Shown here in pieces: positions 20,459-62,000 of a stretch of DNA of 64,000 nt. A program made the position numbers and the translations under genes. The stretch is taken from contig NC_043010.1 in the NCBI RefSeq assembly GCF_006345805.1, positions 37,510,001 to 37,574,000 on the forward strand, in the 5' to 3' direction. The notes under the pieces were generated by a model, which was not told the origin of the DNA, searched no databases, and saw only the letters and a list, made by a program, of their open reading frames with translations. Position 1 is the stretch's first letter; the number at the start of each line of letters is the position of its first letter. The DNA comes from Octopus sinensis (lineage: Eukaryota).

Positions 20459-20812
20459 CTCTGTGTATTTCTAAAGAAAATGATCATAAAATCACATATA
20501 TATATACATATAGATTGAGGATAGTTAAACCTCTCATAGGGACAGTTATATTGTTAATATATTATATTTTGAAGAGACATTTCTTCAATAAATATATTAT
20601 AAAACATCAAATATAAGTTTGAAAATGGAGAGATTCAATGGATATAAATTGATTGCCTACAATTGTTTCACTTTGCACCTAATTCAAATTACAAAACATA
20701 TATAAGTTTGCATTTTGAGTATCCATGGTGGAATATCTTCAGAGCAAAATGGATATTACAGAGTTTATATTTTGATCAATTGAAATATTCCAACAGATGA
20801 AAGCGTGTTTAT

Positions 20813-20843
<31 letters not shown>

Positions 20844-20879
20844 GTATGTATGTGTATATATTATATATATACCTAAAGA

Positions 20880-21290
20880 GATCTAAGGAAGAATGTTACA
20901 ATCGAGATGGTGAACCACAATGAACTTTTTTTGTGTACAGTTTGTGACAGACCAAGCCTTTTTTTGCTGGGCTCAAATCTCATTTGTGAACCCATGGAAA
21001 ACGAACCTCCACCAACTATTCTGCCTATATGACTGTACACATCATTGAATGCAGTGTATGCCAGAAGGTTTGTAAATCTAACAGAGGCCTCAAAAGGCCT
21101 TTTTAAGATCCACAAAGATCAGAACTTAACTGCAGCTCTTGGTGGTCCAAATTGGATGTGCAATCTATGTGAGTGTCTTTTCAGAACATTGGTTTAAAAA
21201 GCGACATCAGATACCATGATGGTGCTAAGGTGTAGGTACGGCAGGTGGTCAAACCCTGCATAAGGAGTAGACAATATATATAATGAATAT
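20880..21290 (+). mobile_element. Decayed LINE 3' end carrying three C2H2 zinc fingers
   Basis: FLCTVCDRP..(A)GLKSHL*TH; ECSVCQKVCKSNRGLKR..KIH; WMCNLCECLFQNIGLKSDIRYH; frameshifts and a stop; (TA)n tail. Confidence 0.55.
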
Positions 21291-22221
21291 AATAAAAGTT
21301 GACTATTTTTTTAATCTTTTATTTATTTTGTAAATAAATAATACAATAATGAATAAGCATTTTATAATGTTTCTTTCTTTTCTGGAAGCTCACCGTGTAC
21401 TAGCAGCTGATGGCTCACAGGCTGGCATCGGTCCATGGACAACCACTTTGAGTAGCACTGGTCTCTAGGACTATGGCATGTATATCAGAGTCTCAGATAG
21501 AGGGAGGAGAGTATTAAGGCATTAACAAACTTAATGTTGACGGTCAACATTTTCATAGTTCTTTAACCATCCCCATTACTGTCTTGCCATTTCGTTTATT
21601 TATCAGGAACCATCTCAACAATCCAGAAAAGATGGGTTAATCAGACACTAGGCAGATGGTAACTGCCAAGTCTCAACTCTGCATAAAACTATACAATACA
21701 TGAACCTTTCGTCATCTACATTTGCTGATAACACTCCGTAATGGTTACTACTACTACTATTCATTACATTCTTTTTTACTTTTACTTCTTTCAGACAATA
21801 GACTACGGTCATGCTGGAGCACTGCTTTGAAGAATTTTAGTCGAACGACTCGATCCCAGAACAATTTTAAAGTCTGGTACCTATTCCATCGATCTTTTAG
21901 TTACAGGGATATAAACACACCAACACCAGTTGTCAAGTGGTGATGAGGGAACAAACAAAAGATATCTATATATACGACGGCTTCTTTCAGTTTCCGTCTG
22001 CCAAATTCGCTCACAAGGCTTTAGTCGGTCCGAGGCTAGTCGAAAGCACTTGCCCTAAGGTGCCACGCAGTGAGACTGAACCCGAGACCATGTGGTTGGA
22101 ATGCAAGCTTCTTACCACATAATCACGCCTGCGCTTTTTCTTTCTTTTCCTTTTTTCAATTATTTCATTTATATTGAACAACCGGCTGTTGGCTAAAAGT
22201 ATCCAACTAACTAATGGTTAC

Positions 22222-43042: not shown

Positions 43043-43120
43043 ATGCTGAAAAGAATTGTGTCCAAATTAGTGCTTAGGTTGAGGCCAAGGAAAATGCTGG
43101 AAGTGTTAACAACCAGTGAG
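43043..43120 (+). CDS. PUS1: PUS1 coding exon 1 (exon starts at 43017)
   Basis: MLKRIVSKLVLRLRPRKMLEVLTTSE; tttcag acceptor at 43016, gtaaac donor; phase 0. Confidence 0.7.
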
Positions 43121-45053
43121 GTAAACAGAAATATAATTTATTATGTCATAGTATGTCGGCCCATCTTGACTGAACAACATTACTTGTTTTAGTTTCATAT
43201 CTAACTAGTCACTATGTACATGACTGCTTGAGCTGCTAGCTAGAAATAACAGCCAAATCTACCTCAAATTACATAACTCAGGTTCTACCATCTAATAAGA
43301 AAATAAAGTTAGGATATTTTGGATACTATGTCTGAAAGTAAGATGGGAGGGTCACAAATGAGCTATCCTTGATTATAAATCTACTGGTATAGGATTGGTC
43401 TTGAGTTAAGCAACAACAGCAAGAAAAAAGGACACAAGATAATGAAGTTTTATATACACTATCTGAATAAATGAATGAAGGTACTTAGTTCAAATCTTTC
43501 CTTGAGTGTTTATAAGAGAAGAATATATGAGGGGTTGCTGAAAAGTTCCTAGCTTTGGGTAAAAGAAAATACAGGAGGATCAGTTAATTATGATTTTATT
43601 CAACACTTATATTCCCCTCTCAGATTCACATACTTATTGTAGTTTTTTTAAGCCTTGTAGAAGAACTCGGAAGGTTGGGCCTTAAACTGGGCCTTTTGCG
43701 AAACCCTTAAAACTAGGAACTTTTCAGATGCACCTCCTCATATGTATAAATTATCTCCTATTCCCTTTGATTTACTGGCGTAAATCAAAGTTAGCTCCAG
43801 AAACAAGGCTCTTATGCATATTGGAAAAATATTCATAGTAACTTTTTTGTTATGTTTTATTTTTCATTGCAAATGTCTGAAATGTGTTTGTTGTAACTGT
43901 AGGCTGCTGCCGTGAAACAAGAAACTGATGACAAAACAGCAATGAAGAGACAGCATGATGACGACGATAATGATGACAGCAAAACTCCTTCGAAGCTTCT
44001 TAAAGTGAGTTTATTTCAAGATTATAATTTTTTCAAGCTATTAATTTTGTCTTTGAGAGAAGAAACCTTTCTTATTCCTCTCTCTCTCTCTTTTTCACAA
44101 TATTACAAGCATACTTATCTGTGTTGTGTGTGTGTGTGTGCATACACACGTATGGTGGCGAGGTGGCAGAAACGTTAGCACACCGGGCGAAATGCTTAGC
44201 AGTATTTCGTCTGTCTTTATGTTCTGAGTTCAAATTCCACCAAGGTCGACTTTGCCTTTCATCCTTTCGGGGTCGATAAATTAAGTACCAGTTACTCACT
44301 GGGGTCGATCTAATCGACTTAATCCCTTTGTCTGTCCTTGTTTGTCTCCTCTATTGTGGGCAATAAAGAAATAAGAAATGTTAGCACACCGGGCGAAATG
44401 CTTAGCAGTATTTCGTCTGTCTTTATGTTCTGTGTTCAAATTCCACCAAGGTTGACTTTGCCTTTCATCCTTTCTGGGTCGATAAATTAAGTACCAGTTG
44501 CATACTGGGGTCAATCCAATTGACTGGTCCCTTCCCCCAAATTTTGGGCCTTGTGCCTAGTGTAGAAAAATATTACAAGCTTGGCTGTGGGGTTAAGGAG
44601 ATTGCTTTCCAATAATGTGGTTTCAAGTTCAGTCGCACTGCAAGGCACCTTGGACAAGTGCCCTCTATTATAAGCCCAGGTTGACCATAGCCTTGTGTGT
44701 GGATTTGGTTGACAGAAAATGAAAGAGGACCATCTTGTCTGTGTGTGTGTGTGTGTGTTGTTTTGATATTGCACTACAGTTGTGAAACAAGCACAACCTT
44801 CTTACAATGTTGTTCATTTCTTGTGTTCCATGAAAACATGTTTGCCCATGGTGATATAATAAATATAATGCTTGGAAACAGGAGGGTTGATGACAGGAAG
44901 GGCATCTGCTGCAATGAATTCTGCTGATCCATGCAAAAGGGAAAATGAATGTTAAAAGTATGAAGATGATAACTAAGACAATAACATTGTTTTTTTACAT
45001 GTCTGTTCTGCCATTCTAGCATGGGTTAGATGAATATTTTATTGAGGCATATA

Positions 45054-45119
<66 letters not shown>

Positions 45120-45548
45120 TATGTATGTATGTATGTATGTATGTATGTATGTTGAGTTGAAGCATTGGTGTAACCATGATGTTCTGGTGATCTGATGAGC
45201 TAGATTTCTGTATCTGCATGTGTAAAAGATTCGAGCGAGGTCGTTGCCAGTGCCGCCTGACTGGCCCCGTGCCGGTGGCATGTAAAAGCATCCACTACAC
45301 TCTCGGAGTGGTTGGCGTTAGGAAGGGCATCAAGCTGTAGAAACTCTGCCAGATCAAGATTGGAGCCTGGTGCAGCCGTCTGGTTCGCCAGCCCTCAGTC
45401 ATTCGTCCAACCCATGCTAGCATGGAAAGTGGATGTTAAACGATGATGATGATGATGAAATTATTATTACATGTAAAAGGCTGTGAAATGGCTGTAATCC
45501 TAAGGATGACATGTGGTTAAATAAACATATTCATCTCTCATACCTCCT

Positions 45549-45601
<53 letters not shown>

Positions 45602-48600
45602 TACACACTCATACCTATGCACACATACTTTTGAATGTCTTATTCATGCGTTCATGTCCACATGTAAGAATAATGTGTTGTTATTTCTCTTTATAACCAG
45701 AAATCCGAAGCAAACATTCCTATCCGAACTGATCGGAAACGTAAAGTAGCATTGTTGATGGCATACTCCGGAGAGGGTTACTATGGCATCCAAGTGTGAG
45801 TAGACAAAACGTTTCATCTATGTCTGTAATGTTGTTGTTCTTGTTGTTTTAGCCCCAGGTCTCTCCTTAGTTGACAGACCAAGTGTGTTTGAACTGTGAT
45901 AATAGTGATTTTTTTTCAGACCTCATTATTTCTAGGAATACAGTATAAAAATCCTTCATTTTATAAGACATTAGTATGTGAATCAAAGGAGATTTAGCTG
46001 CTATTTCTATTGAGTAACCACAGAGGCATCTTCATTGGTGTGTCAAATTCAATCAGATTTGGCCTATAGTGAGTTACACTAACTTCAGATATGCCCGTGT
46101 GAAATCCTGTATGGGTAATTGCCGACATTTGTATAGGTCAGTGGTTCTTTACCAGGGTCCAAATGATCCTTAGGGGGCCATATGATATTTTGTTGTTAAA
46201 ATTCATGTTCAATAAACAGGTTATACCTCTTACAATACTCATAATATTTTAGCAATTTTTTTAATACAATTCTAAATAGTATTTAACTATAAAAAACATA
46301 ATAGGATTTTTTAAGCATTGAATGACTCTGAGGATTCAGTTGAGTAAAAGAGGAACCAAAGGGGCCCACAAGCAGAAGATAGTTGAGAACCACTTGTATA
46401 AATTATTTGCAGTTTGACCAGAGAATGTATAGTCTTCACTTGCATTGAGATTGAATGGGACATGACTTCCTTGAATTTTGGGGGTATTTTTTTGTAATCA
46501 GGTCCACAAAGTCAGCATTGTGAGTTTTAACCATCTTACAGCAATGCTCTCTGCCCTCTTCTCTCTCGATCTTTCTCATGTTTTTCACTATCTTACTCTC
46601 TACCTTGTTCTTCCCTCTCTATCTATCTTACCTTCTTCCTCACTTTCTTCTCTCTGCCTCTCTTACACTTTTCGTCACTCTCCCCTTATTGCATATATCA
46701 CTCTTTTCCTCACACTTTCCTATCTGCCTTTCTATCTCCCTACTTCACTTCCTCTCTCTCTCTCTCTGTCTTACTGACTGCCTCTCTATCCACTCTTATT
46801 TCTCTCTGCCTCTGCTTTCCTTTCTCTCTACCAACCTCATTCTCTGTTCCTCTGTCTCATTTCTCCCCCTCTACCAACTTTCTCTATTTCCATGCAGGTC
46901 ACTCCTCCCCATCACATGGACACTCAAAAAAAGCATTCTAAAACTTTACTATGTTTTCATTTTACATTTGATTTTACTTCCATTTTAATTTTTCTCTCTT
47001 TCATTAACAATTTCTAGTAATTCCGCTTTCCCAACAATTGAGAGTGAACTGTTCAAGGCACTGGTTGCTGTTGGACTTGTGCCACAAGACCATGTGGACA
47101 ACCCATATAAGGTAAGTGTGTGTGTGTTGTTAACCTACACCAGTGGTTCTCAGCCGGGGTTCATATAGCCCCTGTGGGTCCATATAAGATTTTTGGGAGT
47201 CCACACAAGAAAATAGTGAATTGGGGACCCACAATAGAATTTGAAGGTACCCTGAAAAAATTTTGCTGGTGCTATGTAAAAAGCATCCAGCCCACACCGT
47301 GAAGTGCTTGGCATTCGGAAAGGGCATCCAATTGTAAAAACCTTGCCAGAACTGACTTTGCTTGTGCTGGTGCCCTGTAAAAAACACTCAGTCTACTCTG
47401 CAGGGTGGTTGGTGTTAGGAAGGGCATCCAGCCATAAAAACCATGCCAAAACAAACACAGAAGCCTGGTGTAGTCTTCTACCTGGCCAACTCCTGTCAAA
47501 CTGTCTGACGCATGCCAGCATGGAAGGTGGATGTTAAACGATGATGATGATATGTATTACAAGAAGCACCTAGGTTTCTTTCTCTAACATTTTACGTACT
47601 TCATCCTACACATGTTATCATCATCATCATCATCATACATCCGTTGTACTTGACTGGGAGTGTATTTTATTGACTCAGAGGAATGAAAGGCAAAGCTGAC
47701 TTTGGCACAATTTGAACTCAGAACATAAAGAGCTGACAGAAATATTGGTATCAAATTTTGGCACAAGGCCAGCAAGCTTAAGGGAGTGGGTAAGTTGATT
47801 ATATTGAACCCAATGCTCAACTGGTTCTTATTTTATCAACACTGATAGGATGAAAGACAAAGTTGATGTCAGTGGAGTTTGAACTCAGAACTTAAAGACA
47901 TACGAAAATGTCACTGAATATTTTGCCTGGTGTGCTAACGATTCTGCCAGTTCACTGCCTTCAGAACTGAAAGAAATATTGCAAAGCATTTTGTCAAATA
48001 CTCTAATGATTCCAGCACCCTAAGCTGAGCTCAAACTTAAAAAAAAATTTTCATGATAGGTGATGTTAATAGTGATGTTCTATCTGTTACTTATTTCTTT
48101 ATTGCCCACAAGGGGCTAAACATAGAGGGGACAAACAATGACAAACAAAGGGATTAAGTTGATTACATCGACCCCGGTGTGTAACTGGTACCTAATTTAT
48201 CGACCCCGAAAGGATGAAAGGCAAAGTTGACCACAGCGGAATTTGAACTTAGAACGTAACGGCAGATGAAATACCTATTTCTTTACTACCCACAAGGGGC
48301 TAAACACAGAGAGGACAAACAAGGACAGACAAATGGATAAGGTCGATTATATCGACCCCTGTGCGTAACTGGTACTCATTTAATCGACCACGAAAGGATG
48401 AAAGGCAAAGTCGACCTCGGTGGAATTTGAACTTAGAATGTAATGGCAGACAAAATACCGCTAAGCATTTCGCCCGGTGTACTAATGTTTCTGCCAGCTC
48501 ACCTTTTTTTTGCTTTTCTTTTTTTTTATAGTATTAGCATGACCAATAATTCATCATTAACAGATGTTCCCTCTGTTACTGCTAGCCAACTGACCTTGTC

Positions 48601-51600
48601 CTAGTAAACATTGAAGTCATACATTTTTATCCTTTTTTTTTTCAGATGTCTTTCCAAAGAGCTGCTCGTACAGATAAAGGTGTATCTGCTATTGGACAAG
48701 TTGTTTCACTGAAGATAAGTATCTGAACTGTTTTATTGTGTTATTTAAATTTTATACCTCATAACACCTCTAATTAGTCAAGCCAGCTCCATGTGAAGGA
48801 TACCAATGTTAGCAGCACATAAAAAGCACCTGTGTTGCTGCCATGTGAAGAGCATCTGTGCTTGTACCACAGAAAAAGCATTCATGCTGGCACCACATTA
48901 AAAACACCCATGTCAGCACCTTGTAAAAAGTATCCTTGCTGACATCATGTAATCAGTACCCATGTTGCTGTCACATATAAAGTACCTGTGCTGGCACCGT
49001 GTAAAAGCAACCAGTACACTCTGCAAAGTGGTTGGCATTAGAAAGGGTATCCAGCCATAGAAACCATTCCAAAACAGACAATTGGGGCCAAATGCAGCTC
49101 TCCAGCTTGTCAGCTCCTGCTGAACCATCCAACCCATGCCATCATGAGACAGACATAACACAGGCTATGCTTTCAGGTTTTTTGGATAAAGTTTTCAGAA
49201 ATAATCCAATGACTTTACCATTAATTCTGTGAAATATTCTCGGGTCCTGTTAGTACCTATTAATTTCAGTCACAAGGCATTTGACAGCCCATGGCTATCA
49301 TAGACGTTTTCAGATATTTGTGTCTGCAATAGAATTGCAGAATGCATTCAAATGGTGAGAGATATTTCCTTTTAGCTCACATTTGCTGCCTTTGTTTAAG
49401 TCAAATATTCCAGTTAAGAAAATGGCAGTTTGTATGTTGGAAGATATTAAGCGAGCGACTAGAATCCTTCGATCACCTCTGTCTACGCTGCATCCTTCGT
49501 GTCCAATGGCATCACTTTGTCTCCAACAATTTGGTGCGACACCAGTACAAAATCACCTCCCTCCGACAAGTCATCCTAACGAGATGTCTACGTTGGCTAG
49601 GTCATGCACTCCTTTGTCAACTAGGAGAATTCATCTATGAAGCAGTTGCCCCAGCTCCCCTTCGGGGCTGGCGAAAGCGATGTGGTGGACAACGAAAAAC
49701 ATAGCTAATGACAGTCAAAGCTGATCTGGAACCCAACCTAGGCCCCCATATCTACAGCATTCGCCGCTGGAATAAGGAGTGGTTGGAGATCACGTGGTCG
49801 CTAGCCTCAAATCGCCAGGTCTAGTTGGCATTTGTGAGAGATGCAGCACTGAGGATGAATGAAGCCAGCTCAACCCACCCCTGGTGAATGCTGTCTCAAG
49901 ACAAGACAAGACAGTTTGTATGTTGGGGTACAAGAAAATGGCAGTTGGGGTACACATCATACTTAGAGGCTTTGCTTTATTGCTTAATGTTTTTTTATAT
50001 TTTTTTTTTTACATGTTGATACATTTTGATAATTTGATTGATCGACTCAATGAGACACTTCCAAAACAGATCAGAATCTTAGGTAAGTCAGTCTTTTAAA
50101 TGATTTTAAATCTCTTGTTTTGTGGGTTTTCTCTTTCTCTTGTTTGTTTTATGGTTTTATTATTTATTGTTTGGTATGGGGGGAAAAAAAAGAGCCTTCT
50201 GATGAGAAATGAATGAAATTTATTTATTTATTCATCATCATCTTCATCATTTTTTAAACATTCACTTTTCCATGCTTACATGGGCCAGACAGTGGTGCAT
50301 TGAGCATAGTTTCTATGACCAGGTACCCTTCTTGTTGCTAGTCCCTGCTTATTTCCAAGCATGGTAATAATCTCTCAGTCTATGGAACAACAAACGGCCT
50401 GGACATGCTTGTATGGTAGACTGTCAGTAAACAACACCAGAAGACCATCCAGAAGCCATTGCTCACAAACCAGCAAACACACACAAGGGATATAAGAACT
50501 TACTCACACAACTTACAGACACACATGCACACACACACGCGTGCGTGCGACAGGCTTCTTTCAATTTCCGTCTTGCAAACCCACAGACAAAACTTTGGTA
50601 GGCTGGGAACTATAGTAGAAGATACTTGCCCAAAATGCCATGCATTGGGATTGAAACTGTGTGGCTGGGAAGCAAACTTCCTTACTACACTGCCTTGCTT
50701 GCACCTATCTTGCTTTCTACAATTTGCTTTCTACACAGAATTTTTAAATCAAAATGAAAAGAGATAACATTTGAGCTGGTAGTGAGTCAACTGGTTTATT
50801 GTATATCAATTCTAATTTTCTCTCGTGCTTTTCATTTTTGTAGGCATGCTGCGTACTACAAATTCTTTCAACAGTAAGAACCATTGTTCACATCGTACAT
50901 ACATTTATGTTATGCCAACGTTTGCACTGACTCCTGTAGAAGAGGTATGTATGTTGAAAATTGCATCTACAATGACAAATATTTTTTTTTTTTTGCAATA
51001 TTTGTTATTTAACCCTTTCGATACCAACCCGTCTAAAACTGCCTCTGGCTCTGTTGTACAAATGTCTTGTTTTCATTAGTTTTGAATTAAAATCTTTCAT
51101 CAAACCTAGTCACAATTTATGTTCCTAACACTAGCTTAATGACTGGACACTAAACTCTGCTTGCGAAGACCTGTTGAGTCAAGTGAAATCGAAATTGAAA
51201 TCAAATTCATGACTGGCATCCATGCTAGTGGAGCATGAAGAGCACCATCCGAGCGTGATCATTGCCAGAGCAGCTAACTGACTTCTATGCCGGTGGCACA
51301 TAAAAAGCACCATTGTTGCTAGTGCCGCTGGACTGGCTCCTGTGCAGGTGGTATGTAAAAAACACCATTTCGAGCGTGTCCATTGCCAGTACTGCCTGAC
51401 TGGCCCTCGTGCCGGTGGCACGTAAAAGCACCCACTACACTCTTGGAGTGATTGGCATTAGGAAGGGCATCCAGCTGTAGAAACTTTGCCAGATCAAGAT
51501 TGGAGCCTGGTGCAGCCATCTGGTTCTCCAGCCCTCAGACAAATCGTCCAACCCATGCTAGCATGGAAAGCAGACGTTAAACGATGATGATGATGATGAT

Positions 51601-52662
51601 GATGAAGAAGAAACACAGAACATCTCAAAATAAGTACAGTAACAGAAGGGTTAAAACCTTTAGCGCAACATGTGTTTATATATTTGGGGTGAATTATTTT
51701 GTAAGGATGAATAACAGAAACAATGATTTACTTGTAAAAGAAAATCTATGGTAGGATTCAGTTATGTTCCTTTATATTCAGAGTTTAAAGGGATAGCATG
51801 GCTTATCCCTTATTTGTCAATAGATAAAAAGTTCTAGTAATACACTGCAAGTTGATTCAAGGGCTTAGACACATACACACTCATAGTCACGCGTGTGCAT
51901 GCAGTATCTATATTCGTTTGTTCTTGTTTCACTCATTAGACTGTGGGACTGCTTTGAAGGGCTTAGTTGAATAAATTGATCCTGCTACTTCTGTTACTTC
52001 TTCCATTGGTCCTTTTCGCTGAACTGCTGAGTTTAGGGATCATAAGCAAAGCAACACTGGTTGTCAACTGGTTTTGGGACAAACACAGTGATATGCCCAC
52101 ACATTCATATATGCATGCATACATGATCATATGGTGCATGCGCACACACAAATGTGTGCACATGATGGTCTTCCAAATAGTTTCCTTAAACCAAATTCTG
52201 TCAAGGCATAGGTTGGTCTGGTGCTATAATAGAAGACACTTGCACAAGGTTCTGCACAGTGGAACTGAACCAGAGACCATGTAGTTGCAAAGAGAATGCC
52301 TTAGCTGCCCAGCCATACCTGTGCCAATATGTATATACATATATATATATATTTATATAACAAAAATATGGATAGAGGAAATCAGATCTTTAATTGTAGA
52401 ATTCATTATACAAAGCCGACAGTTGTTTCTGTTGTAGCAACAGATTTAGATATAGAAAATGTTGAAATTAATATATTCGAAAATGCATGTTAACACAATG
52501 TCTTCAAGGTGATCCAAAGTTGGTTAAATTCAAAGTGAACTAAGGAAATATTTCCAGTACACAAGCACATACAAAAAGAACATTAAGATGAAAAATAATC
52601 TAAGAAGACTTAATTTTGTATTCAACTCTTGATGATGTCAGTGGATAACAAAAGAATAAAAA

Positions 52663-52718
<56 letters not shown>

Positions 52719-52990
52719 CAAACTTACTTAGAAATGGATGCATGCGTTCTGTCGTGTAATAACAAATTAATAAATAAAATATATGCATATATGTACGTAT
52801 CTACATCTACATGTACATGCATATATGGTACAGGACACCAAAAAAACGTCGAACACAATGAAAAATGAAAACATAAACACAAAACCAAGGAACTGGACAT
52901 TTTTCTTAAACAACAAAAAAATAGAGTACTGGACAAATAACACAAGGAAAATTCCCCTTCTTCAGTCGCCATGGTTTCATCTACTCCGCG

Positions 52991-53047
<57 letters not shown>

Positions 53048-56000
53048 GTAGTTTACGTTTTCTTTTTTATGTTTTATTTGGTGTTTAAATTCTAAATGTT
53101 TTTTTCTTTCTTTCATTTCAGAATGTTGTTTTAGATTACAGAATAGAAGGTAAGCTTCCTGAAAAATATTTCCTTTCTGTCATTGAACTTTGAATTATGA
53201 AGGAGGTTAGATGACTTGCTGCTGTTTGGATTATGTCCTAACACAACATAACACGACCCTAGTTGATAGTATATCTCATAATAAGATAAAAATTGACAGT
53301 TCATATTCTGTAACTTGGTTCCTTCTCTCTCAGTGGCCATTCCACCTTAATGTATGGAGCTGGCAGCACTATTAAGAAAAGTTTCACAAGTGTTTTGTTG
53401 AACTGCAGTTTTTGAATTTAATGCCTTAAGTAAAGCAACCTAGAGTAGACTAGTTCAATGGCAGATTGAATCTTTTGATATCAACCTGTTTGAGACTATC
53501 CTTGGTCTTGTAATACAAGCTTCCTGTTTAAACCTTTCAGCATTCAAATTACTCAGTCAGATGTAAAGCTTATTCACATTCTCTTTACTCTCTTTTACTT
53601 GTTTCAGTCATTTGACTGTGGCCATGCTGGAGCACCGCCTTTAGTCGAGCAAATCGACCCCGGGACTTATTCTTAGTAAGCCTAGTACTTATTCTATCGG
53701 TCTCTTTTGTCGAACCGCTAAGTTACGGAAACGTAAACACACCAGCATCGGTTGTCAAGCGATGTTGGGGGGACAAACTCAGACACACACACATATATAT
53801 AGATATACATACATATATACGATGGGCTTCTTTCAGTTTCCGTCTACCAAATCCACTCACAAGGCTTTGGTCGGCCCGAGGCTATAGTAGAAGACAGTTG
53901 CCCAAGGTGCCACGCAGTGGGACTGAACCCTGAACCATGTGGTTGGTAAGCAAGCTACTTACCACATGTCTTGAATTAATTATGCATCATCTCATAACTT
54001 TGAGATTTCAATGATGTGATTGTTTATTTGTAGAATGACTTTGTAGGGAAGGTGTGAGAGGCCAGATCTGGTCAGTTTGAACATAAAACAGGTTGAATAT
54101 TTGGGCTGAATAAAGCTAAGTTTAAATGCTAAGGGATAAGTCATCATCATCATCATTATTGTCATCATCATTTAATGTCTGTTTTCTGTGCTAGCATGGT
54201 TTGGATGGTTTGGCAGGAGCTGGTAAGCCAGAGGGCTGTACCGGGCTCCAGTCTGTTTTGGTATGCGTTTCTACAACAGGATGCCTTTCCTAATGCCAAC
54301 AACTTCACAGAGTGTACTGGGTGCATTTTATGTGGTGCCAAAACCTTCCATCAAAACTTTATGCTAATTTATGTTCCAAAATGCCAGTGCAATAACGACA
54401 ACATTATTTTTCTAAATTCTTCATTATTTTCATAATAACCGAGCTAAAACATCATCATCATCATCGTTTAACGTCCGCTTTCCATGCTAGCATGGGTTGG
54501 ACGGTTCAACTGGGGTCTGGGAAGCCAGGAGGCTGCACCGGGCCCAATCTGATTTGGCAGTGTTTCTACAGCTGGATGCCCTTCCTAACGCCAACCACTC
54601 CGTGAGTGTAGGTTGTGCATTTTACATGCCACCAGCACAGGTGCCAGACGAGGCTGGAAACAGCCACGATCGGATGGTGCTTTTTACATGCCACCGGCAC
54701 GGAGGCCAGTCAGGGCGGCGCTGGCAACGGCCATGTTTGGATGGTTCTTTTACGTGCCATCGGCACTGGTATCACAACTACAATTTCCATTGATTTTGAT
54801 TGATTTCGATTTCACTTGCCTCAACAGGTCTTCGCAAGTCCTCAACAGGTCTTGTGCATTTCAATAGAAATTTAGTGACAAACGAGTTAAAGAGGCTCTA
54901 ACTCTCACATCTGCTTACTGCTAGAGAAACTGGGGAGATTATGAGTAGTCCAAGTGAACCCTTTTTTACCCTATTTTCCTCTCCATTGTAAACTGTGAAA
55001 GGATTTATTAAAACTTTTGATCTTCTGAATATTAGCAACAAGCAAATTGTGCAGTGATTGTGCTGATGTCACAAATCTGCTGTGCTGCACCGACCACTCA
55101 TGCATACTCGTGTCCACAACTAGGAACCTCTCTGTTACTGTTTGACTTGCTAGAAATAGCACATAAATCTTTCTCAAATTAAATTCAACTGACTTAACCT
55201 CCTAACATACACGTTATTTTTTCAGTTTCTATGATGGTGGTGGTGGTTGTTGGTGATGATGGTATAGTAGTAACAATAGTGGTTGTATGATGATGGTATA
55301 GCAGTAATAATAGTGGTTGTATGATGGTGATAGTGGTGGTAGTGATGAATATAAAGCTGGTTTTGGCAGTAGTAATGGTGGTATAGTAGCAACAATAGTG
55401 GTTGTATGATGATGATAATCATGGTGGTGGTGGTAGTTGCAGTGATAATCACTTCAATTATAATTGCAGTGATGATGGTTATGTTAAACCTAAAAATCCT
55501 ATTTCTTTATATTTCAGAAAGCAAACTGGAAGAGCTGAACAGCGTTTTAAGTTTGTTTAAGGGCACACATAATTTTCATAATTTCACCTCTGGACGGTAA
55601 GACATCCTCTCTTTCTTTCTTTCCTTTTGCTTATTCTCCTCTCATCCTCTCACTTTTTCCTCTTGTCTCTCTCTTTCTCTTTCTCACATTTCTTGTGATT
55701 TGTAGACAGTGGCATAGCTAGGGTAAACTGTGCCCGGGGCAAACTGCAAAAATGTGCCCCTTCCCTTACAAAATCCATGATATTATATAATACTTATTTG
55801 TTACAAGTAATTAATGTTTTAAAGCAATATTTTTGGAATAATTATTTTACCAGGGTTCATTTACCTGCCAGTTCAGTACAGCCTGTAATTAAAAATATAT
55901 TTTTTGAATGTTTACTTTTACGAAACCTCCTTATTTTAACCGTTTAATAATTGAAGCATTAAAAACATCTAATGTGTGAAATGAGATGTAATAAAAAAAA

Positions 56001-59000
56001 AAAAACAATTGTTTAATGTCTTGTCTTTCTTGCTTTTGATGAGGTGCTCCCCACTTCAATTGGCACCTGGGGCACATGTCCCCTTGACCACCCCACTAGT
56101 TACGCTACTGTTTGTAGAACAGTTCATACTTAGTCTGGGACCTTGTCCTTCATCTTGCTGTCGTGGGTGACTCTGCCAGAAGTTAATGCTTCTGAGACTG
56201 CTGCTCTCAGAATCATGGGTGAGGCATCATGCAAGCTTCTTGATCACAACAAGATTGATGACCCTTAGAAGGAAATTGATACTAGTATGACCAGTAGCAG
56301 CCATTCAAGAATTTGGACCTGAAGATCTCCATTTCCAGCGACTTCGAGGGCCACCTCCCAGTGGTGTCGGGCGTCAACGAAGAGCCCTCGACTACAACAA
56401 GATGACCAAAGTTTTTTTTCTTTCCAAGGTCTGGGGTCTCCCGCCCATAAGCCCTAGACCATCACCTAATCACCCTTACCCATCTTGTTGCTTAACAACA
56501 ACAACAACAGCAGCAGCAACACCACCACCATTACCACCACCACCATCACCACCACCACTGCTGAGGTGCTGCCACTGCCTGCACCACCACCTCCTCCTCC
56601 TGTTCCTATTGTTGTTATTGTTGTATAGCTGTACAATGTTGATAATATTGCTCATTGATATTTATCTTTTCTCCCTCTCTCTCATCTTATTTAGGAAATT
56701 CTCTGACCCAAGTGCCAACCGTTACATTATGGATTTTGAGGTAAGTTTTTCCCTTGTTTTTCAACATCTGTTGTTTCTTCTACTTCATTATTCATTCCAT
56801 TTACACCCAATCCCTCCACAGTCATCCCCTACTCATCCCTACCTTCCCTCCAACGTATACCTATCATCACTCATCTCTTGTTCTTCATTCATTATATTCA
56901 TTTCTTATCACTAACTTTCTCCCACTCTCTCATATACTCTTGCAGCCTCTACTCAGCCACACATCCTGTTCTCCACTCCCCTTGTACCTTGAAGGTCCAC
57001 ACTGTCCCCCTCCTTACTACTATTTTTAGCCCCTTCCAGTTCCACCTCAACCACTCTCATCCTCTCTCCTATAATCCTTTCTACTAGAGGCACAAGGCCT
57101 GAAATTGAAGGGGAAGGAGATAGTCGATTACATTGACCCCAGTACTCAACTGGTATTTAATTTATCAACTCTGAAAGGATGAAAGGCAAACTCGACCTCA
57201 GTGGAATTTGAACTCAGAATGTAGCAGCAGATGAAATACTGCTAAGCATTTCGCCCGGTAATATACAAGGGTTGATTGAATTGGTTCTACATTCTCCCAC
57301 TGCATTCCATGTAGGCGACTGTTTTAGTGCTCAAAAAGAAATCAATAATTTTATCGATTTGATGCTTTATTTCTCCTTCTTCTGCCTCTACTTTACATTA
57401 CATCCATATTTTCAGGCAGGAAAACCAGTGGTCATCGATGGTCTAGAGCTGGTCACTATCAGGATTCAAGGCCAAAGTTTTATGTTGCATCACATTCGTA
57501 AAATGATCGGTACGCTATTTACATATTTACATGTTTCCATGTTTCCATTGTTGATATTGTCTTGTTGTTGTGTTGCTGTTTTTGTTGTTATGTTGGTGGT
57601 ACTGTCTGATCTAGCAGACCTATGGTCAAAAATACATCATCCTTGACCCCACATGTCTTATTTTTCTTGTATAAATATATCAAGGACAAAAGAACGGTGA
57701 ATCAGCAGTCATTGGAGTGTCAGATAGAATGCTGTACCATATTTGTTTTGACTAAGGCTAAGAGCTGGCAGAATTGTTAGCACAAGACAAAATGCCTAGT
57801 GGCATTCTATCTGTCTTTACAGATATATATATAAATTTTAATTTAAAATGAGGGTGAGAAATTGGATATTAATTTAATTAACATCAATTTAACACCAGTG
57901 GTCTAGCATACTAAAATCTGAAGGTTCAGTAAATTGTATTATATACATATGAGAGGGATGACAACTATGTGGACAACCCTTATGCTAGAAGTAGATCTGC
58001 TATGGTCTTACCACTCAAGAAAAAATGGTAAGACCATAATAGATCTACTTCTAGCATAAGCCTTCTTAACCACACACCTATACCCACAACTATATATTGA
58101 TTTCGTTTTGTCTTTTCCAGGTTTATCAATAGCCATTGTTCGAGGATTTTGTGGGAAGGATGTCATTGATCTTGCATGGAAGGCTGAGAAAGTAAGTTGA
58201 GCTTCTTTTACTTGCTGCTATTGTTGTTGTTGTTGTTGTTTTTGTTGTTGTTGCTGTTAAGACTGCAGGTCATCTCAAGTGATAGTGGGGGATATTTTTT
58301 TGAGAGAATTTTGACTGTTATTTCTAGCAAGTCAGACAACCATGTTATAATGTAATAACGATAAGACTGATCTTAGATGTGGCTGTGTGGAAGGCTGCAC
58401 CAGACTCCGCTCTGTTTTGGCATGGTTTCTGTGGCTGGATGCCCTTCCTAATGCCAACCACTCTGGGAGTGCAATGGGTGCTTTTACGTGTGACTGGCAC
58501 GGGTGCCGTATGTGCAACACTGGTATCAGCCATGACTGCAGTTTTACTTGGCTTGATGGGTCTTCTCAAGCACGACATAATGCCAAATGGACTTGAAGCC
58601 CAGCATAATGCCAAATGGTCTTGGCCCTTGCCCCCATGAGGCCCAACACTCAAAAGGTAATTTAATTTATCATGCCACTGACACAAGTCCCATTTGTGTG
58701 ACAGCGGTGTCTGCCATAACTGCGATATTACCTGGCTTGATGGATCTTCTTCTCAAGCACAACATAATGCCAAGTATGTATGTAATTATATCATTGATTT
58801 ATCTCTAGTGTTCTGTTTTGTCTTTGATCAAGTAATGGAGTATGGGACCATTGAATGATGACAATATTTTTTGATAATAAAATTATGTGTTTGAACTGTT
58901 AAAACAATATGTTAATTATTTTCAAAATTTTTTCTTTACAGGTGGATGTTCCCAAAGCACCAGGATTGGGCCTTGTTCTAGAAAGGGTAAAGATTTTCTT

Positions 59001-62000
59001 TTTCTATTTCTATTTTCTTGCTATGGCCTGTGTATGTAGCACTTAAACCTTTTGTAATACATGGTGCTTTGGTTTGTGTAACCAAAAAGACCCAAATTTT
59101 TTTCTGTTGAGATTGAAATTGATGGGTGCATATAGAAAACAATGGATAAAGTGCTTAAAACTATCAGGTCCTTAAGAATGAAATGTCCGATTTTCTTATG
59201 CACCAAGTTTGACAGTTGTTAATGTTTTATTCTGACAATTCTTTGTTTTACAACATTGAAGAGTTACATCATCACTTTTCGAAATGCAATTCATGGCGTC
59301 TGATTATATTGTGAGTTTTCTTGTATACAAGTCAAATTTTTCAGACCAAAATTTACAGCCAAAAATGGTCGATTGATTTATATGCTAAAATGATTTTGGA
59401 AGACTAAAAATTCTATGTAAAATGCAGCAGGATTTGGAAAGATAGAGATGATGTTTGAATGTTTACATTATAAACATAAACTATGTTGACTTGTATGTTT
59501 GAGGAGAATATAGTAATATTTATATTATTCAAAGCACCATCCGATCGTGGCTGTTGCCAGCCTTGCCTGGCCCCCGTGCCGGTGGCATGTAAAAAGCACC
59601 ATCCGATCGTGGGCGTTTGCCAGCCTCGTCTGGCACCTGTGCCGGTGGCACGTAAAAAGACCCCACTACACTCACGGAGTGGTTGGCGTTAGGAAGAGCA
59701 TCCAGCTGTAGAAACATTGCCAGATCAGACTGGGCCTGGTGCAGCCTTCTGGCTTCCCAGACCCCAGTTGAACCGTCCAACCCATGGTAGCATGGAAAGC
59801 GGATGCTAAATGATGATGATGATGATTGAAAATGCCTCAACCCTTTAGGATTCAGATTATACTCTCAAGCGGGATGGTGGTTGTCTCTTGAGCCCCAGAA
59901 CAATGATTCTGCAATTTCTTACTGAACAACCATCACAGATAATTTGCTTATAGTGATCAAACGTTTGTACTTACTCATTAGCTCACTCCCTCCATCATGA
60001 TCGGCATTACCTTGTCAAAGCAATCACAAAAGCAATGTGAGATGCAGTGTTTTGCTGAAGAACACAAGGCACCACCTTGTTCAGGAATTGAACCCAAGAT
60101 CTCACAATTGTGAATGCAACCCTCCTAAGCACTAGGCGATACACCCCACTCTGTCAAATTAAATGTTTATTTAGTTACATTGGTTCAAATTAATCATGCG
60201 TTATCTCAGAGCTTTGAGATTTCAATGTTTAGTTTGAGAATGATATTGTAGGGTAGGTGCAAGAGGCCAGATCTGCTTAGTTTGATCACAAAACAGATTG
60301 CATATTTGAGCTGGACATGGCTGATTTAAGTGCTAAAAGGTTAAAATGTAAAAGATATATTATTGATACCATTCAAAATGTGACCGTGTGTGTACTGTTG
60401 GCGATTTTTTTTTCCTCTGTCTTCCCTTCTTCGGATCTTTCCTTCTCCTATGTTTCCGACGAAGAGCTCCGCTCGAAATGTTAAACCCTCCTTCTTTCCT
60501 GAGTGTCCAATAATACTATATTTGTTCCATGTCCTCGCATTGTTGTGTTTTTTTGTGCTTTCTGGTTTGGATTAACTTTATTATTGATATCATATGTTTT
60601 TAGAATCCCTAACTCAGAAGGAAGCAATTGTACTCCATTTATTGGGGTTGTGGGTTCAGCTCTAGCTTAGGTATTTTTGCTGTTATGAAAATAAGGGTGT
60701 ATAGCTTATCAATATTTGTAAAAGCTTTATCAACATAGCCATACAGTAGAATATTGTTAGATATAGATTATGCCTCTGATTTCATTCCATAGTTAATTTA
60801 GATTATTTAAGCAGTGGTTCCCAAAGTGGGCGGTATTGTTCCCCTGGGAGCGTTGGAAAGTTCCAAGGGGGCATTGAAGAAAAATGGGGTGATAATGGGG
60901 GTAGTGATTCATGTAAAAAGCAGGGCCATAATAAGGTAGCGATTCATGTAAAAACAACAAAATAATGGGTTCATTAGGTTAAGTTTTATTTGTGAAATAC
61001 AGTTGCTTTGAATTTGCTTTAGAAAGAGGTCTATGTTTGTGACGGTTAGTTGGGGTGGGGGCACTAGGGATATGGCTTGGATGTAAAGCGGGTGGCAACC
61101 CGAAAAAGTTTGAGAACCACTGGTTTAAAGCATTAGCTATATACAATGTTCTTTCCATACATTTTCAATCATTTTAATAACATTATCACAATGGAAAGAC
61201 CAAAATAGACTGCAAATCATGATGATGATGATAATGATGATTTAATGTCATCTTCCACACTGGCATAGGTTAGATGGTTTGATAGGATCTGACAAATTGT
61301 AGGGTCCTTTTAGTCCTGTCTTTCTGAGAATTTACCAGATTCTCTAGGGCTGGCGTCAGAAAAATTATTACCCAGTTGACTCCATATATTTACTAAATTC
61401 TTCATCACTTTTACATTTAATTGAAATGAAGTTATTGTATTCATTGCATTTTTCAACAGAAATTTGGTAACAAAAAAGGGGTTAACTAGTGTTTGAGTGG
61501 AATTGACTTCAGATTTGAGTGAAGTGTAAGTTGAGAAAGCCACTTGATAACAAAACATTAATTCATGTATGTTGTATAAAAGTCTTATAACTGAATTTCA
61601 TTGGTGTAAAATTGGTGTGATTTAATATTTGTCTTTTCTGGTTCTTCTGTCTAGTTGCATTATAATGGTTACAATAAACGGTTCGGCAATGATGGCATCC
61701 ATGAACCTTTAGTGTGGGATAAATATGATGTAAGTACGACTTCATGTTTTCACTATTATTATGACATGATCTCTCTCTCTCTATATATATATATTATATA
61801 CATGTGTGTGTGTGGACTGGGTGCTTTAAGTGGTACCTGCACTGACAGGGTCACCAATTACTTGCAAGACAGCACACACACACACACACGCACGCACGCG
61901 ATGGTTTTTCTGCATTCCTGGTCTACAAAATTCTGCCATAAAGCCTCGGGCTACAGTAGAAGGCATTTAGTCAAAGTGCTGCACTGTAAGATTGAACTTG

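What the first reader, a model, noticed from the sequence alone, without database searches (positions are those of the whole stretch)
48715..50012. Rare AT-AC intron with a major-spliceosome-like donor right after the PUS1 catalytic exon
Exon 5 ends AAG|ATAAGTAT, the U2 consensus GTAAGT with G1>A and not the U12 ATATCCTT. Exon 6 is preceded by a long T tract ending AC, with no AG. AT-AC gives SLK|MLIHFDNLIDRLNETLP, matching the length and residues I recall for yeast Pus1 (SLKMIIEDPDIKQKINEKLP). The nearest GT-AG solution (48718/49968) inserts about 17 hydrophobic residues. U2-type AT-AC introns are known but very rare (for example in sodium-channel genes). A U12-like branch sequence TGCTTAAT (49981-49988) suggests a U12-to-U2 conversion intermediate. 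Annotation pipelines would probably mis-model this junction.
Basis: partly seen in the sequence, partly recalled or inferred. Interest (0 to 1): 0.75.

Follow-up and report, generated by a model that had tools for sequence, protein, structure and literature searches.

The report
Ancient AT-AC intron in octopus PUS1
The octopus PUS1 gene really has an intron that starts with AT and ends with AC but otherwise carries ordinary (major-spliceosome) signals; this is a very rare but known intron type, already modelled correctly in the public octopus annotation, and it sits at the same spot in snails, clams and leech-like worms.

Summary
Window 48715-50012 is a 1,298-nt phase-0 intron, aag|ATAAGTAT...T-tract-AC|ATG, between PUS1 coding exons 5 and 6.

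Sixteen window exons joined with this AT-AC junction translate exactly to RefSeq XP_029645099.1 (Octopus sinensis). The annotation therefore already holds the junction.

The same AT-AC intron at the same codon boundary is read directly in:
- O. bimaculoides
- Haliotis asinina
- Littorina saxatilis
- Mercenaria mercenaria
- five distinct metagenome contigs that group with the leech Helobdella (98/100 bootstraps)

It is absent from Owenia, Tubulanus, amphioxus and a chiton-like contig.

Every copy has G+5/T+6 (ATAAGT, ATGAGT or ATATGT). None has the U12 TCCTT box. Intron 15 of the same gene is a textbook U12-type GT-AG intron (GTATCCTT, plus TCCTTGAC about 13 nt from the 3' end). It shows what minor-spliceosome signals look like in this genome.

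The best reading is a U2-type "AT-AC II" intron, a new member of a known rare class that is more than 500 My old.

The U12-to-U2 "intermediate" idea is not supported by the cited TGCTTAAT, which lies 25 nt from the 3' end and is Octopus-only. It stays open. Mis-annotation does not occur in RefSeq, but it does occur in Nucella, Sinanodonta and Plakobranchus models.

The parts
43043..63332 (+). PUS1 (pseudouridylate synthase 1) coding region, isoform X2, in 16 coding exons. This is the host gene of the intron.
   Evidence: The 16 exons translate exactly to P0084, which is XP_029645099.1 of Octopus sinensis. Pfam PF01416 is recorded for this protein. It matches human PUS1 PDB 9h51 at E=8e-110.
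48646..48714 (+). Coding exon 5 (69 nt, phase 0 to 0). It encodes [23 protein letters not shown], which contains the catalytic RTDKG motif.
48712..48722 (+). 5' splice site aag|ATAAGTAT. It matches CAG|GTAAGTAT, the sequence fully complementary to the 5' end of U1, at 9 of 11 positions. The mismatches are at -3 and +1.
   Evidence: No GT donor of the gene scores higher; the best of them also reach 9/11.
48715..50012 (+). Intron 5: 1,298 nt, phase 0, AT-AC termini, with major-spliceosome-type signals.
49441..49913 (+). A 473-bp insertion inside the intron. It is flanked by a 13-bp target-site duplication, GTTTGTATGTTGG, at 49428-49440 and 49914-49926, and it ends in (CAAGA)3.4. It is absent from O. 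bimaculoides. It looks like the 3' end of a 5'-truncated non-LTR retrotransposon.
   Evidence: The retrotransposon identification rests on my memory of LINE ORF2 C-termini and was not tested.
49981..49988 (+). TGCTTAAT, the most likely branch-site region. TTAAT fits yUnAy. The branch A would lie about 25 nt from the 3' splice site, which is a normal U2-type distance.
   Evidence: The branch point itself is inferred.
49990..50012 (+). Polypyrimidine tract ending in the AC 3' terminus. Pyrimidines fill 16 of 18 positions from -20 to -3. There is no AG in the last 44 nt.
50013..50082 (+). Coding exon 6 (70 nt, phase 0 to 1). It encodes MLIHFDNLIDRLNETLPKQIRIL(G) and is followed by a consensus GTAAGT donor.
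62257..63187 (+). Intron 15 of the same gene, a bona fide U12-type GT-AG intron: atc|GTATCCTT ... TCCTTGAC about 13 nt before cag|. It is used here as an internal control and is not part of the AT-AC intron.
   Evidence: The GTATCCTT donor is conserved in Octopus, Haliotis, Littorina, Owenia and amphioxus, and Tubulanus has GTATCTTT.

Best explanation
**What it is.** Window 48715-50012 is a genuine spliceosomal intron with AT-AC termini that carries major-spliceosome (U2-type) signals. This class is called AT-AC II.

**How it most likely works** (inferred from the sequence and from published work on this class):
- U1 snRNA pairs with aag|AUAAGUAU almost as well as with a perfect GU donor.
- U2AF and U2 use the long T-tract and a branch site about 25 nt upstream.
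- At the second catalytic step, the usual non-Watson-Crick contact between the first and last intron G is replaced by the A(+1)/C(-1) pair.
- Neither terminus alone can revert without breaking that pair, so the odd termini are 'trapped'.

**How old it is.** The intron has kept these termini at the same codon boundary (..SLK|M..) in cephalopods, gastropods, bivalves and leech-like annelids. This dates it to before the mollusc-annelid split.

**What is shown and what is inferred.**
- Shown: the termini, the coding junction and the conservation.
- Inferred: use of the major spliceosome, the branch point and the A/C contact.
For: **Junction**
- The 16 exons joined with the AT-AC junction equal RefSeq P0084 exactly.
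- Isoform X1 and the O. bimaculoides protein carry the same SLK|ML junction.
- A 1,732-nt Logan transcript contig from another cephalopod (78% identity) reads ...TTAAAG|ATGCTCCTG with no gap at this point.
- The spliced protein aligns to human PUS1 (PDB 9h51) across the junction with a single one-residue gap.

**Conservation, read directly in DNA**

| Source | Termini |
|---|---|
| O. bimaculoides | ATAAGTATCC..TTTATTTAC |
| Haliotis | ATATGTAGC..TTTTCCAC |
| Littorina | ATAAGTTGC..TTTAATCAC |
| Mercenaria | ATATGTATAC..GTTTATAC |
| Metagenome contigs L011-L017 | ATAAGT or ATGAGT .. TTATAC or TTACAC |

- The metagenome contigs group with Helobdella in 98 of 100 bootstraps.

**U2-type signals**
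- The donor matches the U1-complementary sequence at 9 of 11 positions, and pyrimidines fill 16 of 18 positions before the acceptor.
- Every copy has G+5 and T+6, the feature that PMC2831892 notes for the proven U2-type AT-AC introns of sodium-channel genes.
- The published criterion for the class is AT-AC termini plus a good U2-type 5' splice site (PMC1557818).

**Not U12-type**
- No copy has TCCTT at +4 to +8.
- The best branch-like motif is 25-26 nt from the 3' end. The U12 optimum is 11-13 nt, and U12 introns lack a polypyrimidine tract (PMC3584512).
- Intron 15 of the same gene shows canonical U12 signals in these same genomes.
Against: - No RNA-seq read or cDNA from Octopus itself was available. 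The Octopus junction rests on RefSeq models, whose supporting evidence I could not see, and on homology.
- Which spliceosome removes the intron is inferred from sequence alone.
- The annelid-like copies have weaker pyrimidine tracts (11-12 of 18).
- The taxon of those contigs is inferred from a neighbour-joining tree, not from a name.
Confidence: 0.85

Rival explanations
1. It is a U12-type (minor-spliceosome) AT-AC intron with degenerate signals.
For: - AT-AC termini are far more often U12-type than U2-type: 169 against 15 in human (PMC1557818).
- TGCTTAAT matches TCCTTAAC at 6 of 8 positions.
- The gene does host a real U12-type intron.
Against: - The donor matches ATATCCTT at only 4 of 8 positions, and those four are just A, T, A at +1 to +3 and T at +8. 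None of about 13 copies has TCCTT.
- The branch-like motif lies 25-26 nt from the 3' end and is not conserved outside Octopus.
- A strong polypyrimidine tract is present, which U12 introns lack.
- The internal control, intron 15, scores 8 of 8 on the U12 donor and has TCCTTGAC about 13 nt from the 3' end.
Confidence: 0.06
2. The real splice is the canonical GT-AG pair, with the donor after 48718 and the exon starting at 49969. This would insert 16 hydrophobic residues.
For: It is in frame and open in the window.
Against: - The inserted peptide is simply the T-tract translated.
- In O. bimaculoides the homologous agag| acceptor is out of frame (4+45 nt). The neighbouring ttag| acceptor gives an unrelated peptide.
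- That acceptor has no pyrimidine tract.
- No homologue has an insertion at this point, including a cephalopod cDNA and human PUS1 in the PDB.
- The RefSeq models do not use it.
Confidence: 0.02
3. This rival concerns origin only and is compatible with the best explanation. The intron began as a U12-type AT-AC intron and was converted to U2-type: C to G at +5, then T at +6 and A at +4. It then became trapped.
For: - PMC2831892 proposes exactly this rare pathway for AT-AC U2-type introns.
- The observed donors ATATGT (Haliotis, Mercenaria) and ATAAGT (Octopus, Littorina, annelid-like contigs) fit its steps.
- U2-type AT-AC introns tend to sit in genes that also have U12-type introns (PMC1557818). 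PUS1 has one.
- Mercenaria shows that a U12-to-U2 conversion did happen in this very gene, at intron 15.
Against: - No lineage sampled has a U12-type intron at this site.
- Owenia, Tubulanus, amphioxus and a chiton-like contig have no intron there at all.
- ATATGT is also an ordinary U2-type variant.
- The cited TGCTTAAT is Octopus-specific and too far from the 3' end.
- Insect-like contigs have a GT-AG intron 4 nt downstream. This allows a different origin, by sliding or by a compensated double change from GT-AG.
Confidence: 0.25
4. It is an assembly or sequencing artefact, or the locus is a pseudogene.
For: None found.
Against: - The same termini appear in two independent Octopus assemblies and in seven other genomes or contigs.
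- The whole 420-residue reading frame is intact.
Confidence: 0.01

Closest known systems
[quoted passage not shown]
   Same: - AT-AC termini
- the rest of the 5' splice site follows the U2 consensus, with G at +5
- a pyrimidine tract is present
- the termini are conserved over long times
- the host gene also contains a U12-type intron
   Different: - The host gene is different (PUS1).
- The lineage is different (molluscs and annelid-like worms, not vertebrates).
- Dependence on the major spliceosome has been shown experimentally for SCN4A/5A but not here.
TAF2 AT-AC II intron, conserved between human and Drosophila (PMC1557818)
   Same: It is an AT-AC II intron kept at an orthologous position across phyla, that is, for more than 500 My.
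   Different: - The PUS1 intron is found only in part of Lophotrochozoa. It is absent from amphioxus, Owenia, Tubulanus and a chiton-like contig.
- It is not in the published lists I could search.
U12-type AT-AC introns (/ATATCCTT ... TCCTTAAC 11-13 nt from the 3' end)
   Same: The terminal dinucleotides are the same, and the intron is rare and long-lived.
   Different: The PUS1 intron has no TCCTT box, no branch box at the right distance, and it has a pyrimidine tract. Intron 15 of the same gene shows the real U12 pattern.
Experimental G1-to-A plus last-G-to-C suppressor pairs in yeast and human introns (cited in PMC1557818, refs 52-54)
   Same: The same A/C terminal pair rescues the second step of major-spliceosome splicing. 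This is the mechanistic basis proposed here.
   Different: Those are engineered mutants that splice less efficiently. This one is natural, fixed and conserved.

Membership tests
U2-type AT-AC (AT-AC II) introns | AT at intron positions +1/+2 and AC at the last two positions | tested here: met
   The same holds in 9 other genomes or contigs.
U2-type AT-AC (AT-AC II) introns | The rest of the 5' splice site fits the U2-type consensus (criterion of PMC1557818), including G at +5 (PMC2831892) | tested here: met
   The donor aag|ATAAGTAT matches CAG|GTAAGTAT at 9 of 11 positions. G+5 and T+6 are present in every copy. The SpliceRack position weight matrix score itself was not computed.
U2-type AT-AC (AT-AC II) introns | A polypyrimidine tract before the 3' splice site | tested here: met
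   Pyrimidines fill 16 of 18 positions in the window and 14-15 of 18 in the other molluscs. The tract is weaker, 11-12 of 18, in the annelid-like contigs.
U2-type AT-AC (AT-AC II) introns | The mRNA is actually joined at these termini | tested here: inconclusive
   The RefSeq proteins of two Octopus species carry the junction. A transcript contig from another cephalopod is colinear across it. No Octopus reads could be examined.
U2-type AT-AC (AT-AC II) introns | Removal depends on U1/U2/U4/U6 and not on U11/U12/U4atac/U6atac | not testable with these tools
   This needs snRNA depletion or blocking experiments.
U12-type introns | 5' splice site /RTATCCTT | tested here: not met
   The match is 4 of 8 in Octopus, Haliotis and Littorina and 5 of 8 in Mercenaria. 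No copy has TCCTT. The control intron 15 scores 8 of 8.
U12-type introns | Branch box TCCTTAAC about 11-13 nt from the 3' splice site | tested here: not met
   The best match, TGCTTAAT (6 of 8), lies 25-26 nt away and occurs only in Octopus. The distance rule is from PMC3584512.
U12-type introns | No distinct polypyrimidine tract | tested here: not met
   A long T-tract is present.
PUS1 / TruA pseudouridine synthases (host gene) | TruA-family domain with the catalytic Asp in the RTDKGVSA motif, and full-length similarity to PUS1 | tested here: met
   PF01416 is recorded for P0084. Human PUS1 PDB 9h51 matches at E=8e-110 and 4iqm at E=4e-108. The motif is encoded in exon 5.

The most novel reading that the evidence does not exclude
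The PUS1 intron is a frozen relic of a rare evolutionary route. One version is an ancestral lophotrochozoan U12-type AT-AC intron captured by the major spliceosome, with the ATATGT donors of abalone and clam as surviving early steps and ATAAGT or ATGAGT as later ones. The other version is a GT-AG intron that slid by 4 nt from the position still used in insects. Either way it would be one of the oldest U2-type AT-AC introns known. It would also offer a natural series for testing the 'trapped termini' model.
Probability: 0.2. Interest if true: 0.6.

Novelty: new member of a known kind. Interest (0 to 1): 0.4.

Why it matters
U2-type AT-AC introns make up about 0.003-0.008% of introns in the genomes surveyed, and only a handful of genes carry them (PMC1557818).

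- **A new, old example.** A further case held for more than 500 My in two phyla, with three donor variants, gives comparative material for the idea that such termini persist because they can only change as a pair.
- **A within-gene contrast.** The same gene also carries a conserved U12-type intron, and one lineage (Mercenaria) has converted it to U2-type. PUS1 is therefore a compact natural system for comparing the two spliceosomes.
- **A practical annotation trap.** Pipelines limited to GT-AG truncate the protein (Nucella), delete 10 residues (Sinanodonta) or remove the catalytic aspartate (Plakobranchus). All three errors fall at this junction.

Tried and rejected
- **First protein search.** The 131-aa query returned only proteins of 230 aa or shorter and no octopus hit. 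The tool seems to keep only targets within roughly 0.57-1.75 times the query length. A 313-aa query fixed this.
- **Failed locus look-ups.** Nucella P0024, Liolophura P0090 and Ostrea P0113 (the last two 'isoform X2') were not on record. Heterobranch, chiton, Helobdella and vertebrate loci therefore could not be fetched.
- A 35-aa alignment and a 23-aa and a 38-aa query to the search for related loci were all rejected.
- **Cluster look-up** of the unnamed read-through ORFs gave no names.
- **Literature.** No paper in the held library links PUS1 with AT-AC or with minor introns. PUS1 is absent from the held supplement tables of PMC6717393.
- **Feature scans.** Rfam found nothing in the window. 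TRF found only the (CAAGA) tail of the insert.
- **MAFFT** misaligned the 3' end of the two Octopus introns because of the 473-bp insert. I read that junction by eye.
- **Explanations considered and rejected.**
  - A-to-I editing of A+1 would give GT-AC, which is not a working pair. The termini are also conserved in clams and snails.
Full report
**1. What is in the window**

The + strand of 43043-63332 carries a 16-exon PUS1 gene.
- A tblastn scan with a recalled human PUS1 fragment, used only as a lead, placed the exons. I refined the boundaries by eye and by script.
- The joined exons translate exactly to P0084, 'tRNA pseudouridine synthase A isoform X2 [Octopus sinensis]', XP_029645099.1. 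The match covers all 420 residues and the stop.
- Coding exon 5 (48646-48714) encodes [23 protein letters not shown], the catalytic-aspartate motif. Exon 6 (50013-50082) encodes MLIHFDNLIDRLNETLPKQIRIL(G).
- Between them lie 1,298 nt that begin ATAAGTATCT and end TTTTTTTTTTTAC.

This includes TGCTTAAT at 49981-49988 and the GT-AG alternative at 48718/49968, which adds 16 residues rather than about 17.

**2. The AT-AC junction is the coding one**

- Isoforms X1 and X2 of O. sinensis and the O. bimaculoides protein XP_052828822.1 all read SLK|ML.
- A 1,732-nt Logan contig (SRR8281691) carries an uninterrupted 478-residue ORF that is 78% identical to the octopus protein. I take it to be cDNA from another cephalopod. 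It reads ...TTAAAG|ATGCTCCTG... at this point.
- About 130 orthologues have no insertion here.
- The octopus protein aligns to human PUS1 (PDB 9h51, E=8e-110) across the junction with one single-residue gap.
At the adjacent AG it gives an unrelated peptide.
- I could not inspect Octopus reads. For Octopus itself the junction therefore rests on RefSeq models plus homology.

**3. Other introns of the gene, and an internal control**

Fourteen of the fifteen introns are GT-AG. Intron 5 compares with them as follows.
- Its donor aag|ATAAGTAT matches the U1-complementary CAG|GTAAGTAT at 9 of 11 positions. This equals the best GT donors of the gene.
- Its last 20 nt are 16/18 pyrimidine.
- It has no AG for 44 nt before the acceptor.

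Intron 15 (62257-63187) is a textbook U12-type GT-AG intron: atc|GTATCCTT, with TCCTTGAC about 13 nt before cag|.
- The intron at the same position has GTATCCTT in O. bimaculoides, Haliotis, Littorina, Owenia and amphioxus, and GTATCTTT in Tubulanus.
- In Mercenaria it is GTAAGT, with a pyrimidine tract.
- Canonical minor-spliceosome signals therefore exist in these genomes and in this gene. Intron 5 has none of them.

**4. Conservation of the AT-AC intron**

I fetched orthologous loci through annotated proteins and read the DNA directly.

| Source | Termini or state | Intron length |
|---|---|---|
| O. bimaculoides | ATAAGTATCC...TTTATTTAC | 765 nt |
| Haliotis asinina | ATATGTAGC...TTTTCCAC | 2,070 nt |
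| Littorina saxatilis | ATAAGTTGC...TTTAATCAC | 814 nt |
| Mercenaria mercenaria | ATATGTATAC...GTTTATAC | 1,900 nt |
| Owenia (annelid) | exons 5 and 6 contiguous | none |
| Tubulanus (nemertean) | exons 5 and 6 contiguous | none |
| Branchiostoma | exons 5 and 6 contiguous | none |
| Unnamed eukaryote (L001) | exons 5 and 6 contiguous | none |

A search with an exon-5 profile found short ORFs that read from exon 5 into whatever follows.
- One ORF (P0249) is 94% identical to the chiton Liolophura and has exons 5 and 6 fused.
- Seven others continue with I-S or M-S-S, which means the following DNA starts with AT. None continues with I-S-F or I-S-L, the reading of ATATCCTT.

A scan of metagenome contigs then gave the DNA.
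- Five distinct contig sequences have the whole intron: L011, L012, L013, L015, and L014 (which is the same as L016 and L017). They read ATAAGT or ATGAGT ... TTATAC or TTACAC | ATG.
- Three more contigs show the donor only: L010, L018 and L021.
- L011 is 85% identical, and L016 70% identical, to the Logan transcript P0120.
- In a neighbour-joining tree (387 columns) the group {L016, P0120, P0094, P0101, Helobdella} appears in 98 of 100 bootstraps, apart from all molluscs.
- I infer that these contigs come from clitellate-type annelids. I recall that these JGI sample series are gutless-oligochaete metagenomes, but I did not test that.

The intron is therefore shared by three mollusc classes and leech-like annelids. 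The simplest reading is that it predates their split and was later lost in several lines.

**5. Which spliceosome**

- The published definition of U2-type AT-AC ('AT-AC II') introns is AT-AC termini plus a good U2-type 5' splice site (PMC1557818).
- The proven sodium-channel examples all have G at +5 (PMC2831892).
- All copies found here have G+5 and T+6.
- U12-type introns have /RTATCCTT, a branch box 11-13 nt from the 3' end, and no pyrimidine tract (PMC3584512). Intron 5 fails all three tests.
- I therefore assign it to the major spliceosome. This remains an inference from sequence.
- The mechanistic point also comes from the literature cited. An A(+1)/C(-1) pair can replace G/G at the second step, so the termini can only change together.

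**6.

- The TGCTTAAT argument is weak. The motif is 25 nt from the 3' end, it also fits yUnAy, and it occurs only in Octopus.
- No sampled lineage has a U12-type intron at this site.
- A U12 origin is still not excluded. PMC2831892 proposes ATATCC to ATATG(N) to ATAAGT as a rare route to trapped AT-AC U2-type introns. Abalone and clam do carry ATATGT.
- Another lead comes from insect-like contigs. They have a GT-AG intron 4 nt downstream (AAA TTG C|GTGAGT ... cag|CT GAA), so their GT sits exactly where G5T6 of ATAAGT sits. I cannot decide between these origins.

**7. Annotation**

RefSeq gets the junction right in five species. Other pipelines do not.
- Nucella lapillus P0024 stops after SLK+MSFSSTISL, a read-through that also shows the intron starts with ATG.
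- Sinanodonta P0098 lacks VISLKMLLNQ relative to its relative Potamilus. This is the signature of a forced GT...AG solution.
- Plakobranchus P0129 lacks [18 protein letters not shown], which includes the catalytic Asp.

**8. Verdict**

This is a real and correctly observed intron of a rare but known class, and RefSeq already annotates it.
- its depth of conservation across two phyla
- its donor variants
- its coexistence with a conserved U12-type intron in the same gene
- concrete mis-annotations at the junction

No paper in the searchable library describes it.

Noticed in passing
window 62257-63187; L003 about 13708; L004 about 34426; L005 about 23416; L007 about 35643; L008 about 3948; L009 about 5270: Intron 15 of PUS1 (phase 2, after ..EKEEKS) is a U12-type GT-AG intron: GTATCCTT donor, TCCTTGAC about 13 nt from the 3' end. 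The intron at the same position has GTATCCTT in O. bimaculoides, Haliotis, Littorina, Owenia and amphioxus, and GTATCTTT in Tubulanus. PUS1 was not in the minor-intron gene tables I could search.
   Followed up: partly
L006 about 18262-21722 (Mercenaria mercenaria): In the clam the orthologue of that U12-type intron is caaag|GTAAGTTAC ... tttacattacag|. This looks like a U12-to-U2 conversion within Bivalvia.
   Followed up: no
window 49441-49913 (duplicated target site at 49428-49440 and 49914-49926): A 473-bp insertion with a 13-bp target-site duplication and a (CAAGA)n tail sits inside the AT-AC intron. It is absent from O. bimaculoides, and there is no other copy in the window. Its frame-0 translation, which contains stops, resembles the C-terminus of a non-LTR retrotransposon ORF2 (from memory). 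Next to it is an extra 22-bp local duplication, ggtacaagaaaatggcagttgg.
   Followed up: partly
window 48790-49000: This stretch holds imperfect repeats of about 26 nt (ACCYRTGYTGSCAYCAYRTAAAAAGY-like). One unit (48879-48904) is missing in O. bimaculoides. TRF did not call the array.
   Followed up: no
window 53122-53149: A 28-nt micro-exon (NVVLDYRIE, phase 0 to 1) was found only by a splice-site scan and then confirmed by the exact match to P0084.
   Followed up: yes
window 63188-63332, and beyond 64000: The two RefSeq isoforms share the U12-type donor at 62256 but use alternative last exons with related sequences: X2 has SLFKWLPCLHHHCY.. and X1 has SMLNWLVSLHNHTFGY... This suggests a duplicated terminal exon. 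The X1 exon lies outside the window.
   Followed up: no
proteins P0024 (Nucella), P0098 (Sinanodonta), P0129 (Plakobranchus): Three deposited mollusc gene models are wrong at exactly this junction. One is truncated with read-through, one has a 10-residue deletion, and one has lost the catalytic-Asp segment.
   Followed up: partly
L032, L034, L045, L046, L047, L051, L053: Insect-like metagenome contigs have exons 4 and 5 fused and a GT-AG intron 4 nt downstream of the AT-AC site (phase 1..AAA TTG C|GTGAGT...cag|CT GAA..). Their GT coincides with G5T6 of the lophotrochozoan ATAAGT.
   Followed up: partly
proteins P0097, P0099, P0104, P0106 (heterobranch gastropods): Heterobranch mRNAs and proteins read SLK|A.. 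or SMK|I.. instead of SLK|M... The Plakobranchus mis-model hints that the intron may differ there, either shifted by 1 nt or converted to GT-AG. The DNA could not be fetched.
   Followed up: no
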